From positions 164,459 through 228,458 of IMG/VR virus record IMGVR_UViG_3300035698_010479: a DNA stretch of 64,000 nt. One strand, written 5' to 3'. Below, in pieces: positions 43,470 to 61,616 of the stretch. The notes under the pieces were generated by a model. It saw only the letters and a list, made by a program, of their open reading frames with translations. It searched no databases and was not told the DNA's origin. The position numbers and the translations under genes were made by a program. Numbering within the stretch: the stretch's first letter is position 1; every line of letters begins with the position of its first letter.

Positions 43470-46400
43470 TTATTTCTTCCTAGTTAAAACAGCCATAGAT
43501 AAACTAGATGAAACACTATTTATACCTGTAGCAGCTGACCAATTAGAAGTGTTTCTGTTTCTAACTAATCCACCACTACTATGCATCGAGGTTTTTGATG
43601 TTTCGTCTACTATTTCATGGTCTAATGCTTTTACACCGTAACTTGCTAGTATTAAAGCAGAGTATATATCTTTGTTTTGTCCCTTCTTAGGTGTATCAAA
43701 GTGAAGAGATCCACCAGATGTTTGTGTTACAACTATGTTTAAACACTGTTTCTTTAACTCGTTTATTAAATCATACTCGTCTAGTATTAAGTCAGATACT
43801 ATATCTACTGGTACTATTGGAAATTGTAAATGACCATCTTCAAATAAAGATAGTGCTGCAAAGTTAGCGTCAGCTATCCAAGATGTACTAAATGTAATTA
43901 ACTCAAGAATTCTATTACCCTTTAAAGTTAGCGTGTCTTTATCATTTCTATTTAGTATTGGCTCAGCACCATTATAACCCTCTGCTAGTAAGTCTGCAAC
44001 GGATTTACCACCGCCTCCTCTATCCATAAATATACGTAATACATTATAACTACTACAAAGCTCTTGCAGAGACATAGTTATGTCTTGTGTTGTTCTGCCG
44101 TCTAAAGCTAGTACTCTCACTATCTTATTTGGTTTACCTAATTTAATTATTACCACACCACATTTTGCTTTACCACCCTGATTAGGATCTATACCTATTA
44201 TATAAGAAGAGCCTTTATCACCACTTAACTCAATAACATAATCCATTGTAGAGCATTTTTCTAGTATTGATGCTTTAAAGAATCCTTCAGAATCAGATAC
44301 CATGGCCCCTAAATATTCCATAGCAAATTCATGACTAGACATAACCCTTTCAGCGTTCTCGATATTTTTAGGGTCTAAGAAGCCGTCCGGTAGTGCTGTA
44401 TATGGTATTTGAAAAACAGCATGATCTTTAGAACCTTCCTCAATCTGATTCCAATACTCACGCATACGTTTGTACATATGATTAAACTTATAGTAACCAG
44501 AGGAAGTACCAATCATCTTGTTGATGGAGTCTTCTTCAAAATCATCTTCAAAAGCTAACCCTGCCTCTATTAAAGCAGTTCTTCTTTCTAACTCCCTGAC
44601 CTTTTTCATTGGATCTAGTTTAGTGATACTCATAGGAGCTAAAACTGTTTCAATTATCTTAGATGGTACTTGTGCAAACTCATCTACTATAACACAGTAA
44701 AAACGTGAACCACGAATCTTTCCACCATCAGCACCTAGAGGAAGAGCCTCTATAAAAGCACCATTATGGCCATTCACTGCTCTAAACTTTAAGTAGCACG
44801 TGTCCGAGCCTCTAATTGGCCGTTTCTCTGTAGCGGCCTTAAGTATAGGTGCACTGGTATAAAGTTTTTCTATCTCAGCAAATATCATTTTTGATTGCCT
44901 AAATGACGGGCCAATTAGACCCACACGATATCCTGGGTATAATAAGGCTAGTAGAGCAGATAATGTACCTGATAAGAATGTATTATGATTAATAAAACCA
45001 TTTGTCATATAATTAGGCTCAACTTCTGATTCCATATCCATCTCAAAGTCATAACAGTCACCTTTCCAATCTTCTATAGATACAACCGTGTCAAAGTAGT
45101 AATTATATCTTAGTATCTCTTTTAAATTGGTGATAAAATGTGATACCTGTTCTAAACTAAATCCCTTATCTTCTATGCTTGTACATTGCTCTAAAAATTC
45201 ATGCAGTTTAACATAAGTTAATTCTTTTTTATTATTAGTTTCTATATTAAAAGATGGCTTTTTAGATGTTCTGTAAGTAGTTTGATAATAAGTAGTTATA
45301 GCTTTACATACATGTAGTACATAAGGTACTGTATCTTTATTAGGATTTAATACCTTACTTGAAAAATAATTATTTAATATAGTTTGTTTTCTTTTTAATC
45401 TAAAACCTATAAGTTCTTTGAACTTATAGGCATCTTCAGAAAACATGTCTAATAAATAGGCTTTACCAAAATCTGACTTAGTCTTTTTCTCTCTAAGTCT
45501 AGCTATGATACCTAAGTTGAGTAGCATCATTTGAATCTCTTCCAACAATTGTCTAGACACAGAACAACAAGATACACCACCGTTGGTATTATGCACTGTA
45601 CCATCTGTGTCAAAATAACCTTGAAGGAAAGCAATTTGTGACTCTCTTTTAGAAGTACGTATAGAATATGGTACAGTTTTATCATATGCTAAAGTTATAG
45701 GTACTTTATATGTGTTTATAAACTTATTTATACCTTTAGCATAAAATATTACGTCGCATGTACATGACCCAGACTTGTAAGTTATATTATAATTAATATT
45801 ATTAAGTGTGCAAAAAGCAGCAGTAAAAGAAATTAAGTCTTCATCCTCGGAAGTTATAAAGGCACCTGAAATTTTTTTTCCAATATAACCATCCCCTATT
45901 AGTAAACCCAGTAAATACGCGTCATCTATAGGTACTTTATTAACACCAAAAACTTTTTGTCCTCTTTGAATACAGACTTTATCACCAACACTAAATTCGG
46001 CTAGTGTTTTATAAACAAAGTTACCTTCATAATCAATTGTAAGTAAAGGGTGATGATCGCTCCCTCTTTTAATAATACCGTTCTGTGTAATTAACTTCTT
46101 ACCTTGTATACCTTTTTCTAAACATAGTTTTTTAGTATTTCTAAAACCTTCTGATGTAAACATTTTGGTATTATAGTCAATAACTTCATCCTCCCCATCA
46201 GATAAGTATTCTGGTATCTCTGGGAGTACCTCATTTAGATATACAATACCTTTATTAAAATATGTAGTAATTTCACGTAAATATACCGATTTTCCAAAAC
46301 CCCTTGTAGCCACAGAAAGTGTATAAGGTTTGAACCACATAGCTTCAAATACTATACGTTGTACAGGAGCTAGGTCTACTCCTAAAAGTTCATAGGCAGC

Positions 46401-46484
46401 TATACAGGGGTTATTTCTATAAAACTCTATTAGGTCTGGACCTTGTTGTAATACAATATCCATATTTTTGGTTAGCTTAGACAT
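43470..46484 (-). CDS. terL: terminase large subunit containing an intein
   Basis: Walker A ATRGFGK|T split by the intein; GSRFYCVIVDEF Walker B; GIDP and MDRGGGG nuclease motifs; KDIYSAL C-terminal Asp; 568 aa after splicing. Confidence 0.93.
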   Translation of the reverse strand: MSKLTKNMDIVLQQGPDLIEFYRNNPCIAAYELLGVDLAPVQRIVFEAMWFKPYTLSVATRGFGKSVYLREITTYFNKGIVYLNEVLPEIPEYLSDGEDEVIDYNTKMFTSEGFRNTKKLCLEKGIQGKKLITQNGIIKRGSDHHPLLTIDYEGNFVYKTLAEFSVGDKVCIQRGQKVFGVNKVPIDDAYLLGLLIGDGYIGKKISGAFITSEDEDLISFTAAFCTLNNINYNITYKSGSCTCDVIFYAKGINKFINTYKVPITLAYDKTVPYSIRTSKRESQIAFLQGYFDTDGTVHNTNGGVSCCSVSRQLLEEIQMMLLNLGIIARLREKKTKSDFGKAYLLDMFSEDAYKFKELIGFRLKRKQTILNNYFSSKVLNPNKDTVPYVLHVCKAITTYYQTTYRTSKKPSFNIETNNKKELTYVKLHEFLEQCTSIEDKGFSLEQVSHFITNLKEILRYNYYFDTVVSIEDWKGDCYDFEMDMESEVEPNYMTNGFINHNTFLSGTLSALLALLYPGYRVGLIGPSFRQSKMIFAEIEKLYTSAPILKAATEKRPIRGSDTCYLKFRAVNGHNGAFIEALPLGADGGKIRGSRFYCVIVDEFAQVPSKIIETVLAPMSITKLDPMKKVRELERRTALIEAGLAFEDDFEEDSINKMIGTSSGYYKFNHMYKRMREYWNQIEEGSKDHAVFQIPYTALPDGFLDPKNIENAERVMSSHEFAMEYLGAMVSDSEGFFKASILEKCSTMDYVIELSGDKGSSYIIGIDPNQGGKAKCGVVIIKLGKPNKIVRVLALDGRTTQDITMSLQELCSSYNVLRIFMDRGGGGKSVADLLAEGYNGAEPILNRNDKDTLTLKGNRILELITFSTSWIADANFAALSLFEDGHLQFPIVPVDIVSDLILDEYDLINELKKQCLNIVVTQTSGGSLHFDTPKKGQNKDIYSALILASYGVKALDHEIVDETSKTSMHSSGGLVRNRNTSNWSAATGINSVSSSLSMAVLTRKK
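44982..46289 (-). mobile_element. intein with LAGLIDADG homing endonuclease (436 aa, aa66-501 of TerL)
   Basis: Starts SVYL, ends NGFINHN followed by Thr; LAGLIDADG-like LLGLLIGDGY and FLQGYFDTDG. Confidence 0.92.
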
Positions 46485-57125: not shown

Positions 57126-58427
57126 TTAAAATGTTTTATCTTGTAATTTTTCAGCCAGTTCTAATAGTTCACTTCTGTAAGAATATTTTAAATTAACATA
57201 AGCTAATGACTTATGTGGTAGTGCTCTAAGAAGTTTAAGCAAACCACTGTTAGATGGTTTTATACTATAGCTCTGTATCAAATCCCCTGTCATAATAATC
57301 TTGGACTCTTCTGTAGCCCTACTTAAACAAGCTGAAATTAAATCTATTGTACAAAGCTGCACTTCATCAAGAAGGAGGAAATCATCCATCAAACTTAACC
57401 CTTGTATACTATTGATGTCTATTAACTCAAAAAATTTATTAAATAGCTCTGTCTTAACAAAATCAAATGATTTACCCTCTTTAGATTGGCCTTTAGTATT
57501 ACCAAATAAGAAGTATAGGGAACTAAGAAAACCCATAGCCCATGAAAATAATTTATCATCCGTGTTTCCAGGAAGGAACCCAATATTATATCTATGGTCA
57601 ATGCCTATAGGAGGCCTACTAATAAATGTTTTTTTACTATTTTCAGCTAGTGCAAACGCAGAACTAATTAAGCTTTTACCAGACCCCCATTTTCCGGTAA
57701 TTAAAACATTATCTGCATTGGCTAACGCGTAGAATGCACATATTTGATATACATCTTTTGATTTTAGTTTGAAATTTGGTCCTTCTATAGTTCTATATTT
57801 AGGGTTGTTGTCTATCCTTTCTAGCATATATGTTTTAGGATTATTAGCATAAACACAAACGTCTTCATCATTTTCATCTCTAATAAACATAAAAAACCAG
57901 CTTTCACGTGTAACACCTTTATTATCTTCCAACCAAGTTAGTAATTGTTCATATTCACCCATGAAGTACTTTTGAAGAAAACAAAAAGCCTTAGGTATAC
58001 CGTTATCTCTAAACTCAGGTAACTGTGACTCACTTATATAAATATAAGGGTCAAATATACCATTAGCTATATTACCATACAATCTTACAGGTACTTCTTT
58101 ACTCTCAGCAATTATACTCATTGAAATATCTTTTGTGGCTATTGTAGCACCTGTTTTCTTTGCAGCAGCAATTATTAAATCATCATTACTAGAAATATCT
58201 TCTTGATTAACAACAAATTCTATTACACCTGGTCTAGTCTTTTTAAATTCTTTTATAGAGTTTATAGCAGCTCTAGCTGAGAAAGATAAATCTGGATTAA
58301 ATTTATGCTTATCTAACTCCTTTAATACTACTGATGATAATACTATCCCTGTATACTCTTTATTTAATTTAAATAATATATTAGGGTCATCCAATAACAG
58401 ATTAGTATCTACTAGTATTTTCGACAT
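57126..58427 (-). CDS. phoH: PIN-PhoH (PhoH2-type) RNase/ATPase
   Basis: PIN: ILVDTNLLL, ELD.HK, NDD.I, TKD..M; ATPase: GKWGSGKS, LLDEVQ, GDLIQ, RS.L. Confidence 0.88.
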   Translation of the reverse strand: MSKILVDTNLLLDDPNILFKLNKEYTGIVLSSVVLKELDKHKFNPDLSFSARAAINSIKEFKKTRPGVIEFVVNQEDISSNDDLIIAAAKKTGATIATKDISMSIIAESKEVPVRLYGNIANGIFDPYIYISESQLPEFRDNGIPKAFCFLQKYFMGEYEQLLTWLEDNKGVTRESWFFMFIRDENDEDVCVYANNPKTYMLERIDNNPKYRTIEGPNFKLKSKDVYQICAFYALANADNVLITGKWGSGKSLISSAFALAENSKKTFISRPPIGIDHRYNIGFLPGNTDDKLFSWAMGFLSSLYFLFGNTKGQSKEGKSFDFVKTELFNKFFELIDINSIQGLSLMDDFLLLDEVQLCTIDLISACLSRATEESKIIMTGDLIQSYSIKPSNSGLLKLLRALPHKSLAYVNLKYSYRSELLELAEKLQDKTF

Positions 58428-60088: not shown

Positions 60089-60412
60089 TTAGAAGTATAC
60101 ATAAAATGTTATACCTACTCCTGCAGCTTCTCTATAATCCAATGATTCATGAATACTAAAGTTGTTAATTAGATATTCTTTAACAAATCCAATAGTTAAC
60201 TTTAAACCACAAGTATTATCTTGTGATATATTATATCTAATGTTGTATCCTAGTAAACCTAAGCCTTTAATGTGTTTGAAATTTTGGTCATTGTAAGATT
60301 CAGTACTTATGTCTTTGTAGAAACTATTAGAGCTAGCTATTGTGGAGTAACTTAGAATTAATGCTACTATTATAATCTGTAATGTCTTTAGTAGATTCAT
60401 ATTAATCACCAA
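60089..60412 (-). CDS. exported/outer-membrane-type hypothetical protein
   Basis: Signal-peptide-like N-terminus, beta-type body ending in Phe. Confidence 0.5.
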   Translation of the reverse strand: MVINMNLLKTLQIIIVALILSYSTIASSNSFYKDISTESYNDQNFKHIKGLGLLGYNIRYNISQDNTCGLKLTIGFVKEYLINNFSIHESLDYREAAGVGITFYVYF

Positions 60413-60529
60413 ATGTTAAACAACTTATATTAGATGTCTTTACTATAGTACATGTTATTTATTACTACTTATAATACATATTGTAATACAATAACTGTAC
60501 TACTTACTAATTTGTTAGAGTGAGTGCAG

Positions 60530-60810
60530 TGAGTACTTATGCCCCCATGTACGACTAAAAATAAAGAGGTGTCGCACATAAGGGGCAGAATAACTAACTA
60601 TTTGACTAACTTGTCGTCGGTCGTTTGTTTCGTTTTTTTAGGGGAATAACGTGCCCAGGTCTACCTTTACCACGCGAAGCCTAGTCCTATCACCAAGTCT
60701 TCTACCCCACATTCTGGATGTTTCCATCTAGGACGGCGGGATGCCAATTAAGTGCATCCTGTCAGGGTCTCCCTATTAATTTCATAGCCGGGCAACGCTA
60801 TACCTGCAAA
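60530..60810 (-). ncRNA. candidate structured non-coding RNA, unclassified
   Basis: GC-richer island without an ORF, containing many nested helices; G-U pairs favour the minus strand. Confidence 0.5.
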
Positions 60811-60901
60811 GTAAGTTATTTATTAAATAATTCCTAATGCACCCTCAAAGGCTTTACTAAAATCAGAGGGATTTAAATATAAAGATAAGTATGTATATAA
60901 C

Positions 60902-60930
60902 AGCGTAACAAATAAAATCTATAAAGTCAA
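60902..60930 (-). promoter_or_regulatory. sigma70-like promoter pointing into the structured island
   Basis: TTGACT-17 nt-TACGCT. Confidence 0.45.
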
Positions 60931-60945
60931 CACTTATTTTTTAAA

Positions 60946-61086
60946 TTAGAAGGCTCCGTTATGAATAAGGATTATTAAAGATACGAAAGAAGTTACTATA
61001 CTGAGGGCAGCGAGAGCTAATAGTACCAAATTTGTTTTAGCTTGCTGCTCTGCTACCCATGAAGGTGATCTGTGTCGTGTGTTCAT
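60946..61086 (-). CDS. small single-pass membrane protein (46 aa), absent from the ORF track
   Basis: MNTRHRSPSWVAEQQAKTNLVLLALAALSIVTSFVSLIILIHNGAF; AGAGAG upstream; follows the TAACTAAC motif. Confidence 0.5.
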   Translation of the reverse strand: MNTRHRSPSWVAEQQAKTNLVLLALAALSIVTSFVSLIILIHNGAF

Positions 61087-61116
61087 GTATATCTCTCTGG
61101 TTAGTTAAAAGAAATT

Positions 61117-61149
61117 AAAAAGGGTACTACTTAATTTTAGTAGTACCCT
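61117..61149 (-). terminator. intrinsic terminator after the lipoprotein gene
   Basis: AGGGTACTACT-7 nt-AGTAGTACCCT plus a U-tract. Confidence 0.8.
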
Positions 61150-61157
61150 CACTCTTG

Positions 61158-61616
61158 TTACTTGATCACTAAACCAATTCTTGCTTTGGCTGTTGCATTT
61201 ACAATCTCAACTACTTTCCAAGCTACGACTAACTTTTCATCAGGTAGTATACCTTGTACATCTAATTTTTGAGCTATACTAGCTTTTACTACCTCTACCA
61301 AATCATTAAATGATTGTAGTGTTAAAGGATCTAAATTTAACTTAGCTGTTTCAATAGCTAGTGCTGAATCTAAGCTGCTTAATTCAATAATCTCTATAGT
61401 GTTATCATCTCTTAGAGCCAATAAAGCGCTTGTTACTTCAAAAGCCGGAATAACCGTTTTTGGATAAGCCGCCATAGATGCTCCTACAGAAAGCTGGATA
61501 ACTGCGGCCTCCACTGGGTCAATTTTACCATCACCAATAGTTGATGTACCATCAGTAGCACATCCTTGCAGCGCCAAAAATACACACATTACCAACCCAA
61601 TTATGAGTTTTTTCAT
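61158..61616 (-). CDS. lipoprotein
   Basis: MKKLIIGLVMCVFLALQG-C signal II-like N-terminus. Confidence 0.75.
   Translation of the reverse strand: MKKLIIGLVMCVFLALQGCATDGTSTIGDGKIDPVEAAVIQLSVGASMAAYPKTVIPAFEVTSALLALRDDNTIEIIELSSLDSALAIETAKLNLDPLTLQSFNDLVEVVKASIAQKLDVQGILPDEKLVVAWKVVEIVNATAKARIGLVIK

What the first reader, a model, noticed from the sequence alone, without database searches (positions are those of the whole stretch)
60530..60895. Unclassified structured RNA candidate with its own promoter
Seen on the minus strand, in a gap with no ORF: hairpins ATAGC/GCTAT, AGGG/CCCT, GGATGC/GCATCC and GATG-GAAA-CATC (GNRA loop) nested within GTCCTA/TAGGAC; GCGTG/CACGT; an alternative long-range CAGGT/ACCTG; an A/C-rich linker; then a long GCCCC.TATGTGCGAC/GTCGTACATG.GGGGC stem. 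A TTGACT-17-TACGCT promoter lies ~90 nt upstream. I could not match it to tRNA, tmRNA, RNase P or common riboswitch consensus. Inference: a new phage ncRNA or cis-regulatory RNA.
Basis: partly seen in the sequence, partly recalled or inferred. Interest (0 to 1): 0.65.

Follow-up and report, generated by a model that had tools for sequence, protein, structure and literature searches.

The report
Extended EGFOA-family RNA in a jumbo phage
The gap holds a real, conserved, about 390-base structured RNA gene with its own promoter in a giant phage; its centre belongs to EGFOA, a known RNA family of unknown function, flanked by extra folded domains not described before.

Summary
The hairpins and the promoter exist as described, on the minus strand. 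Five orthologous loci in related phage contigs keep the same unit: -35 TTGAC, 17-nt spacer, -10, then about 390 nt of RNA. Compensatory changes support ten helices. Cells paired are 93% (core), 93% (5' domain) and 83% (3' hairpin), against 26-63% when partners are slid. In each domain, 0 of 500 shuffles reach the observed percentage paired or covariation score.

It is not unclassified. Bases 60637-60754 match Rfam EGFOA (RF02955) at 37.0 bits, with a cut-off of 37.7 (E 6e-5). Four of the five orthologues (L002, L003, L004, L016) score 42-44.5, above the cut-off; the fifth, L029, was not scanned.

What is new is the context and size. The window is the end of a 228-kb phage genome, probably of a Bacillota host. 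The RNA has a 5' domain (H1-H3, H5) and a 3' linker plus long hairpin. Models of these domains find them only in this phage lineage.

Function is unknown. I favour a stand-alone, trans-acting scaffold RNA over a cis leader. No transcript evidence could be obtained.

The parts
60902..60930 (-). Sigma-70/sigma-A-type promoter: TTGACT, 17-nt spacer, TACGCT, with TG two bases upstream of the -10. The predicted start is about 60894-60896.
   Evidence: The sequence is. In all six orthologues the -35 is TTGAC and the spacer is 17 nt. The -10 is TACGCT, TATAAG, TAGTAT or TATATT. Identity to L002 begins just upstream of it, at 60944. The consensus scan does not list it.
60871..60894 (-). A 24-nt leader without G, conserved as ACUUAUC.
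   Evidence: It is predicted unpaired in all six sequences.
60842..60870 (-). H1 hairpin, CCCUC/GAGGG, with a 19-nt loop.
   Evidence: The arms change to CCUCA/UGAGG, CUUGUU/AACAAG and ACCUAC/GUAGGU in the orthologues. Three of 5 pairs change on both sides.
60805..60841 (-). H2, a hairpin of variable length closed by UGCA/UGCA.
   Evidence: In one search, helix 2 has 91.7% of cells paired and 2 pairs with changes on both sides.
60735..60804 (-). Junction helix GGU (60804-60802) with GCC (60737-60735). It encloses H3, the 5' strand of the pseudoknot and H5.
   Evidence: RNAalifold predicts it. All cells are paired, with U-G changing to U-A in two sequences (helix 3).
60784..60801 (-). H3 hairpin, AUAGC/GCUAU, with an 8-nt loop.
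   Evidence: The arms are UGGC/GCCA, AUGGC/GCCAU and UGCCC/GGGCA in the orthologues. All cells are paired and 2 of 3 modelled pairs change on both sides.
60763..60767 (-). CCCUG, proposed 5' strand of pseudoknot PK1. It would pair with CUGGG (60658-60654) in the H9 loop.
   Evidence: L004, L016 and L003 and most canonical members have CCCAG/CUGGG. L029 has CCCUG/CAGGG, a change on both sides. Window and L002 have a U-U mismatch (helix 1). This pairing is inferred.
60739..60759 (-). H5 hairpin, GGAUGC/GCAUCC.
   Evidence: The arms are AAGUACUU/AAGUACUU, UUCGAC/GUCGGA, GGGC/GCCC and AGGA/UCCU in the orthologues. All 3 modelled pairs change on both sides.
60637..60754 (-). Match to Rfam EGFOA (RF02955) over the whole model: 37.0 bits against a cut-off of 37.7.
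   Evidence: Orthologues L002, L003, L004 and L016 score 44.2, 42.1, 42.1 and 44.5 bits.
60728..60736 (-). Conserved block CCGUCCUAG. GU.CUA is the proposed 5' strand of pseudoknot PK2, pairing with UAGAC (60663-60659) in the H9 loop.
   Evidence: Both strands never vary in the six sequences, so there is no covariation for or against (helix 2).
60717..60728 (-). H6, GAUG-GAAA-CAUC. It corresponds to the first hairpin of the Rfam model.
   Evidence: One search shows the alignment. L003 has GCUAG/CUAGC. All cells are paired (helix 3).
60641..60708 (-). H7, GGGG/CCCC, the closing stem of the core. It encloses H8 and H9.
   Evidence: The arms are GAAGAA/UUCUUC, CAGGGAUU/AAUCCUUG, GGGAUU/AAUCUC and GAGAGAA/UUCUCUC in the orthologues. 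Four of 5 pairs change on both sides.
60676..60702 (-). H8, GAAG/CUUC, with an enlarged loop carrying the lineage-specific UGAUAGGAC.
   Evidence: Six of 9 pairs change on both sides (helix 5). The loop motif UGAUARG is conserved in all six.
60649..60675 (-). H9, GCGUG/CACGU, with a 17-nt loop, GUAAAGGUAGACCUGGG, that is nearly invariant.
   Evidence: All cells are paired and 2 pairs change on both sides (helix 6). Five of six sequences have a G-U closing pair, which shows that this strand is the functional one.
60587..60640 (-). A/C-rich linker containing the conserved CGA..CGACCGACG.
60541..60586 (-). H10, a 15-pair terminal hairpin. No run of U follows it.
   Evidence: After realignment to a model, 82.8% of cells are paired against 69.6% in shuffles (0 of 500). 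Seven of 15 pairs change on both sides. The terminator scan does not list it.
60496..60540 (-). Conserved, G-poor C/U-rich tail (ACUCACUGCACUCACUCU). It is either the 3' tail of the RNA or a promoter for the next genes.
   Evidence: Identity to L002 ends at 60496. In the alignment, the 3' edge reads TGnTATGAT in L003 and L004 and TGTTATAAA in L016, which look like extended -10 elements.

Best explanation
This is a stand-alone gene for a structured non-coding RNA of a jumbo phage. It is a divergent, enlarged member of the EGFOA family.

Host RNA polymerase would start at a conserved sigma-70/sigma-A-type promoter, at about 60895. It would make an RNA of roughly 350-390 nt with three parts.
1. 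A lineage-specific 5' domain: H1, H2, H3 and H5, tied together by a short GGU/GCC junction helix.
2. The EGFOA core: H6-H9. In it the almost invariant H9 loop probably pairs back to CCCNG and GU.CUA, forming a double pseudoknot around H5.
3. An A/C-rich linker and a long terminal hairpin, H10.

I propose that the RNA works in trans as a folded scaffold. The compact core would self-associate, as isolated EGFOA cores do in vitro. The lineage-specific outer domains would bind phage or host partners.

Shown here: the helices, their conservation, the promoter motif and family membership. Inferred: transcription itself, the 3' end, the pseudoknots, oligomerisation of the full-length RNA, and action in trans.
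For: Identity:
- EGFOA matches over the full model at 37.0 bits, E 6e-5.
- Orthologues L002, L003, L004 and L016 score 42-44.5 bits, above the cut-off.
- Both signature blocks, CCGUNCUAG and GUAAAGNUAGACCNGGG, are present.

Structure:
- Core: 92.9% of cells paired and 15 of 33 pairs changed on both sides, against 26-48% paired when partners are slid.
- 5' domain: 92.6% paired and 10 of 18 pairs changed on both sides.
- H10: 82.8% paired and 7 of 15 pairs changed on both sides.
- No shuffle of 500 reaches the observed pairing or covariation score in any domain.
- G-U pairs fix the strand.

A unit of its own:
- The -35 and the 17-nt spacer are conserved in six loci.
- The 85%-identical block shared with L002 is bounded by the promoter and the tail, 60944-60496, with unalignable DNA on both sides.
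- A terminator lies upstream at 61150-61120. A separate 11-of-12 promoter lies at 60083-60055 for the genes further downstream.
- The genes between the RNA and the next conserved gene differ among orthologues.

In trans rather than in cis:
- Across the family the downstream genes are unrelated: capsid, terminase and portal, Pol III alpha, ParA.
- No protein is shared between the flanks of the locus groups.
- In L014 the ORFs listed downstream are on the opposite strand, and the sequences of L013 and L014 suggest that the RNA converges on its downstream genes there.
- L009 and L022 have a hairpin followed by a run of U about 100 nt after the core.

Oligomers: cryo-EM found trimers and dimers of EGFOA cores (bioRxiv 10.64898/2026.07.01.735769).
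Against: - There is no transcript evidence. The only runs labelled RNA that hold relatives are contigs, may contain DNA, and include one contig that also spans the promoter.
- H10 is not followed by a run of U, so the 3' end is undefined and read-through into the 107-aa ORF is possible.
- The window's -10 is weak, 3 of 6.
- The score is 0.7 bits below the Rfam cut-off.
- Only six sequences from about five lineages support the outer domains.
- PK1 rests on a single double change and is mismatched in the window itself.
- Oligomerisation was shown only for short constructs of other family members in vitro.
Confidence: 0.6

Rival explanations
1. It is a cis-acting 5' leader of the downstream minus-strand genes. 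One version is a processive antitermination RNA in the manner of HK022 put or Bacillus EAR, which modifies the polymerase that transcribes it. Another is a leader that senses a ligand or a factor.
For: No intrinsic terminator follows the RNA. All genes of the window downstream of it are on the same strand, in an array of about 60 kb that holds further terminator-like sites, for example 58478-58446. The RNA keeps its position upstream of the same gene cluster in four related phages. Very strong sequence conservation of the core loop would fit contact with a universally conserved machine such as RNA polymerase.
Against: Downstream genes are unrelated in other EGFOA loci. L013 and L014 appear to converge on their downstream genes, and L009 and L022 have a terminator-like hairpin after the RNA. 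A strong separate promoter precedes the conserved cluster at 60083-60055. The ORF directly downstream (60089-60400) is not conserved in the orthologues. There is no alternative terminator/antiterminator pair.
Confidence: 0.25
2. It is an orphan riboswitch-like aptamer or a self-cleaving ribozyme. In this reading the conserved pseudoknotted core binds a small molecule or catalyses cleavage.
For: The core is compact, has about 20 invariant loop nucleotides across very different phages, and probably forms pseudoknots. Small ribozymes are common in phages (general knowledge).
Against: No expression platform is present, and gene association is not consistent. No match to any known riboswitch or ribozyme family reached E 10. 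The cryo-EM preprint searched reports no ligand or cleavage for the two EGFOA cores it solved.
Confidence: 0.08
3. It works at the DNA level, as a replication origin, a packaging site or an operator cluster. In this reading the hairpins are incidental or form in single-stranded DNA.
For: It lies in a large ORF-free gap. Some family members sit near RepA_N, ParA or Pol III genes. A 6-1-6 palindrome lies just downstream at 60480-60492.
Against: Helices contain G-U pairs that would be A-C mismatches on the other strand, so the constraint is strand-specific. A conserved promoter points into the element. Isolated family members fold as RNA. Cumulative GC skew shows no switch here.
Confidence: 0.05

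Closest known systems
EGFOA RNA motif (Rfam RF02955; Weinberg et al. 2017, PMC5737381; cryo-EM of two members in bioRxiv 10.64898/2026.07.01.735769)
   Same: Both share the signature blocks CCGUNCUAG and GUAAAGNUAGACCUGGG, the same four core helices (H6-H9), and a setting in large ORF-free gaps of environmental sequence. The match covers the full model at 37.0 bits, and four of the five orthologues score above the cut-off.
   Different: The window scores 0.7 bits below the cut-off. The H8 loop is enlarged and carries the conserved UGAUARG. About 160 nt of 5' helices and about 110 nt of 3' linker plus hairpin covary, but models of them find them only in this jumbo-phage lineage. The conserved promoter and the phage setting are not part of the Rfam model or of the description in the preprint.
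GOLLD and ROOL large ornate RNAs
   Same: These are also large structured RNAs of unknown function, often carried by phages or prophages, and they form RNA-only multimers. The sources are PMC5737381 and the title and abstract of bioRxiv 10.1101/2024.12.08.627333.
   Different: No sequence or model similarity was found. This RNA is smaller, and no tRNA genes are nearby.
phi29 prohead (packaging) RNA
   Same: It is a phage-encoded RNA with its own promoter that works as a homo-oligomer (general knowledge).
   Different: No similarity of sequence or fold was tested or seen. The gene is 14 kb from the terminase gene. No evidence ties it to packaging.
HK022 put and Bacillus EAR antitermination RNAs
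   Same: Both are structured RNAs just downstream of a promoter, at the head of long gene arrays on the same strand, with no terminator of their own (general knowledge).
   Different: There is no sequence match. This RNA is much larger. Other family members are followed by convergent genes or by terminators.

Membership tests
EGFOA (RF02955) | Covariance-model score at or above the Rfam gathering cut-off of 37.7 bits | tested here: not met
   The window scores 37.0 bits, E 6e-5, over model positions 1-108. It is absent from the gathering-threshold scan. Orthologues L002, L003, L004 and L016 score 44.2, 42.1, 42.1 and 44.5. The miss is marginal, and the orthologous group as a whole qualifies.
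EGFOA (RF02955) | Conserved sequence blocks CCGUCcUAG and GUAAAGCUAGACCUgGG | tested here: met
   The window has CCGUCCUAG at 60736-60728 and GUAAAGGUAGACCUGGG at 60670-60654, with one change, C to G. A pattern built from both blocks retrieved family members almost exclusively.
EGFOA (RF02955) | The four helices of the Rfam consensus: the first hairpin, the closing stem, and two internal hairpins | tested here: met
   H6, H7, H8 and H9 are all present. In the six orthologues 83-100% of cells are paired and 14 pairs change on both sides.
EGFOA (RF02955) | Location in an unusually large intergenic region of environmental sequence (as described in bioRxiv 10.64898/2026.07.01.735769) | tested here: met
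   The ORF-free gap is about 530 nt, 60412-60946. The source is a virus record whose sequence is held by salt-lake metagenome runs.
EGFOA (RF02955) | Homo-oligomerisation of the core (trimer or dimer) | not testable with these tools
   This is known only from cryo-EM of two other members.
Stand-alone bacterial or phage small RNA | Own promoter and own intrinsic terminator | tested here: inconclusive
   The promoter motif is conserved. H10 has no run of U after it, and the terminator scan does not list it.
Riboswitch or cis leader | Consistent association with one class of downstream gene, and an expression platform | tested here: not met
   Downstream genes differ among loci. No protein is shared between the flanks. 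No alternative terminator/antiterminator was found.
tRNA, tmRNA, RNase P and other Rfam families | A match to the family model | tested here: not met
   ARAGORN found nothing. Besides EGFOA, the Rfam scan up to E 10 gave only matches far below their families' cut-offs (E 0.09 to 8.8).

The most novel reading that the evidence does not exclude
The EGFOA core may be a module that large tailed phages use to engage a universally conserved host machine, such as RNA polymerase or the ribosome, or to build an RNA-only multimeric scaffold during infection. In this jumbo-phage lineage it would have been built out into a three-domain RNA of about 390 nt, whose outer domains recruit lineage-specific partners. 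That would make it a phage counterpart of ornate RNAs such as GOLLD and ROOL, or a functional analogue of phi29 pRNA or HK022 put, with a solved core structure already available.
Probability: 0.15. Interest if true: 0.8.

Novelty: new variant of a known kind. Interest (0 to 1): 0.5.

Why it matters
EGFOA is an orphan RNA family. Two core structures have just been solved, yet nothing is known about its biology.

This locus and its relatives place the family in tailed phages. In every EGFOA locus where I annotated the neighbours, they were phage or plasmid genes.

The comparison also shows that in one lineage the natural RNA is three to four times longer than the Rfam model. It supplies a conserved promoter and a probable double pseudoknot. 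Together these give concrete full-length constructs and a genomic setting for testing what the RNA does, and whether the oligomers seen in vitro form with the native transcript.

Tried and rejected
- **Rfam and tRNA scans.** Rfam at gathering thresholds over the whole window found nothing. tRNA and tmRNA scans found nothing.
- **Known phages.** blastn of the gap against 50,697 phage records found no match.
- **Pattern scans.** Scans of 185,579 prokaryote genomes gave 0 hits, then one chance hit inside a coding region, L033. L005 is also a chance 19-mer.
- **EGFOA-assoc-1.** I recalled from memory that a companion motif of this name exists. My guess at its accession, RF02956, was wrong: that is DUF2693. 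No second family appeared in about 190 kb of EGFOA loci. I could not test whether the flanking domains correspond to it.
- **Flanking domains in canonical loci.** Models of the 3' domain (R1) and the 5' domain (R2) hit only the six orthologues, not the flanks of canonical EGFOA loci. My impression that the flanks are homologous family-wide is therefore not supported.
- **5'-3' closing helix.** UACUUAU/AUAAGUA, predicted by RNAalifold, is not kept in L004, L016 or L003, and I dropped it.
- **Anti-Shine-Dalgarno tail.** The phage uses AGGAG. The window's tail lacks CCUCC, although L003, L004 and L016 carry such tracts. This is weak.
- **Shared neighbouring protein.** An all-against-all search across family groups found none.
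- **Expression.** No run on record as RNA holds the window's sequence. Three wastewater runs labelled RNA-Seq hold relatives that are 80-90% alike, as contigs of 365-540 nt. One spans exactly 60533-60894, but another includes the promoter, and depth is similar on a neighbouring gene. This is therefore not evidence of a transcript.
- **Arm-swap control.** Cognate arms pair far better than non-cognate arms. The arms were chosen by eye, so I rely on the model-aligned counts instead.

Full report
**Where the window lies.** The window is the last 64 kb of a 228,458-bp IMG/VR virus record that CheckV estimates to be 86% complete. It encodes a large terminase, a major head protein and tail proteins, and almost all genes are on the minus strand. 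The terminase is 23-27% identical to terminases of phages of Bacillus, Staphylococcus, Enterococcus and related hosts. Ribosome-binding sites read AGGAG and G+C is about 34%. A Bacillota host is therefore likely, but this is an inference. Salt-lake metagenome runs hold the DNA.

**The observation.** The gap between the 46-aa ORF (60946-61086) and the next ORF (start 60400/60412) has no ORF above 39 aa. The 366-nt stretch folds at -102.1 kcal/mol against -90.6 ± 4.8 for dinucleotide shuffles, z = -2.41.

**Identity.**
- At Rfam's gathering thresholds nothing is reported in the window.
- A permissive scan of 60300-61200 gives one good match: EGFOA (RF02955) at 60637-60754, minus strand, full model, 37.0 bits against a cut-off of 37.7, E 6e-5. 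The next best match has E 0.09.
- A pattern made from the two conserved blocks of that match retrieved 8 viral and 16 metagenome stretches. All 23 such matches that I scanned score above the EGFOA cut-off, from 42 to 76 bits, and no other family matched; some matches are duplicates of one contig or two copies in one locus.
- The window is therefore a marginal-scoring but genuine relative of a known family.
- That family was described in Weinberg et al. 2017 (PMC5737381). Its biology is unknown. A 2026 preprint reports cryo-EM trimers and a strand-exchanged dimer of two short EGFOA RNAs, and calls the family putative small RNAs in unusually large intergenic regions.

**Orthologues and the extent of the unit.**
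- Five other loci align with the window over the whole gap, not only the core. They are L002 (also seen as L026 and L028, from contigs of 55 and 264 kb), L029, L004, L016 and L003.
- The loci are syntenic. In L002, L003 and L004 the 115-aa, 154-aa and 148-aa proteins and a PIN-PhoH protein follow the RNA on the same strand; L029 was found through its 115-aa homologue, and the genes downstream of L016 were not held.
- Against L002 the DNA is 85% identical from 60944 to 60496 and unalignable on both sides. The conserved block thus starts at the promoter and ends 45 nt after the last hairpin.
- All six loci have TTGAC(T/A), a 17-nt spacer and a -10 of TACGCT, TATAAG, TAGTAT or TATATT.
- A terminator-like hairpin with a run of T lies upstream at 61150-61120. 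An 11-of-12 promoter lies downstream at 60083-60055.

**Structure.** Folding each orthologue in anchored segments gives the same order of helices in all six sequences. The order is:
1. a G-free leader;
2. H1 and H2;
3. a short GGU/RCC helix that encloses H3 and H5;
4. H6;
5. H7, which encloses H8 and H9;
6. an A/C-rich linker;
7. H10;
8. a C/U-rich tail.

The arms differ in sequence but stay complementary.

| Domain | Alignment | Cells paired | Shuffled mean | Pairs changed on both sides | Paired when partners slid |
|---|---|---|---|---|---|
| Core | MAFFT | 92.9% | 83.4% | 15 of 33 | 26-48% |
| 5' domain | realigned to a covariance model | 92.6% | 80.0% | 10 of 18 | 31-50% |
| H10 | realigned to a covariance model | 82.8% | 69.6% | 7 of 15 | 36-63% |

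In all three domains, 0 of 500 shuffles reach the observed percentage paired or covariation score. The model-fitted alignments lean towards the structure they were fitted to, and six related sequences can exceed shuffles for phylogenetic reasons. The slid controls and the many double changes are the stronger argument. Recurrent G-U pairs, for example the closing pair of H9 in five of six sequences, show that the minus strand is the constrained one.

- Confirmed with covariation: ATAGC/GCTAT (H3), GGATGC/GCATCC (H5), GATG-GAAA-CATC (H6), GCGTG/CACGT (H9) and the long stem (H10).
- AGGG/CCCT exists only in window, L002 and L029. It overlaps a strand that I think has another partner.
- GTCCTA/TAGGAC keeps 4-5 of 6 pairs elsewhere. 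It cannot exist in canonical members, whose H8 loop is short.
- CAGGT/ACCTG remains possible, but it competes with the GGU/RCC helix.

**A probable double pseudoknot (inferred).** Read 5' to 3', CCCAG, then H5, then GU(N)CUA is the complement of the H9-loop segment UAGAC-CUGGG. The loop could therefore pair back to form a helix interrupted by H5. The GU.CUA/UAGAC part never varies. In the other part, L029 has CCCUG/CAGGG where most members have CCCAG/CUGGG, which is one double change. Window and L002 have the intermediate U-U. The L009 and L010 group lacks an obvious CCCAG. I treat this as a lead.

**Is the enlarged architecture family-wide?** Canonical loci also have conserved extra hairpins on both sides of the core. 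However, covariance models of the window lineage's 3' domain (R1) and 5' domain (R2) find only the six orthologues. The outer domains are therefore specific to this lineage, or diverged beyond detection.

**Context of the family.**
- Where I annotated neighbours, the downstream genes differ: major head protein and RepA_N (the L018 group), terminase and portal (L006), Pol III alpha preceded by an amidase and a giant ORF (L007), and ParA (L010).
- No protein family is shared between the flanks of the seven locus groups.
- L013 and L014 appear to converge on their downstream genes, and L009 and L022 carry a hairpin followed by a run of U after the RNA.
- Together these points argue against a leader dedicated to particular genes. 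They favour a self-contained RNA that works alone or with host factors.

**Expression.** No run on record as RNA holds the window's sequence. Two wastewater runs labelled metagenomic RNA-Seq hold several relatives, 80-90% alike, as contigs of 365-540 nt lying on 60476-60944. One contig spans exactly 60533-60894. Another includes the promoter, and depth is similar on a contig matching a neighbouring gene. Contig ends may simply mark where variants diverge. This shows that the RNA block is conserved among otherwise different wastewater phages. It does not show that the block is transcribed.

**The 3' end is unresolved.** H10 is strong but is followed by AUAAGUACUC, not a run of U. The conserved tail could be a single-stranded part of the RNA. 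Alternatively it could be DNA signal for the next genes: its 3' edge reads TGnTATGAT in L003 and L004 and TGTTATAAA in L016 (alignment).

**Verdict.** The feature is real and well supported as a structured RNA gene. It is a new, enlarged variant of a known orphan family, not a new class. Its function remains unknown. My working model is a trans-acting, possibly self-associating scaffold RNA, at about 0.5-0.6. A cis-acting leader or antiterminator is the main rival, at about 0.25.

Noticed in passing
window 7311-29732 (-): A single ORF of 7473 aa. Its only Pfam match is a phage minor-tail (tape-measure) domain at about residues 3505-3698, and the second half has no match. If it is one tape-measure protein, it would be extraordinarily long.
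   Followed up: partly
window 43470-46484 (-): The large terminase subunit has 1004 aa. Its first roughly 500 residues match a PHROG of unknown function and, more weakly, an endonuclease family, ahead of the terminase domains.
   Followed up: no
window 57126-58427 (-): A fusion protein with a PIN domain and a PhoH-like ATPase. It is conserved at 60-85% identity in the related phages, about 2 kb downstream of the RNA.
   Followed up: partly
window 60946-61086 (-) and 61120-61150: A 46-aa ORF with a hydrophobic stretch sits between a strong, possibly bidirectional, terminator hairpin and the RNA promoter.
   Followed up: no
window 60480-60492: A 6-1-6 palindrome, ATTGTAtTACAAT, lies just beyond the conserved tail. 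It could be an operator for the downstream promoter region.
   Followed up: no
window 60684-60692 (H8 loop): The lineage-specific loop UGAUAGGAC resembles the H9-loop segment GGUAGAC that I propose pairs with GU.CUA. The two could compete for the same partner, which would make a conformational switch.
   Followed up: partly
L022 687-829 and 9792-9901 (-): One 11.3-kb metagenome contig carries two non-identical EGFOA copies about 9.1 kb apart. Related contigs of 8-9.5 kb encode a major head protein, a RepA_N/DnaD-like initiator, repressor-like proteins and a tape-measure-like protein. These may be small phage-like elements in tandem.
   Followed up: partly
L007 6-7382 (+); also L012 and L020 (contigs of 250 and 208 kb): Another EGFOA group sits beside an ORF of more than 2458 aa, on very long contigs from gut and other metagenomes. 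EGFOA may therefore be common in large phages.
   Followed up: no
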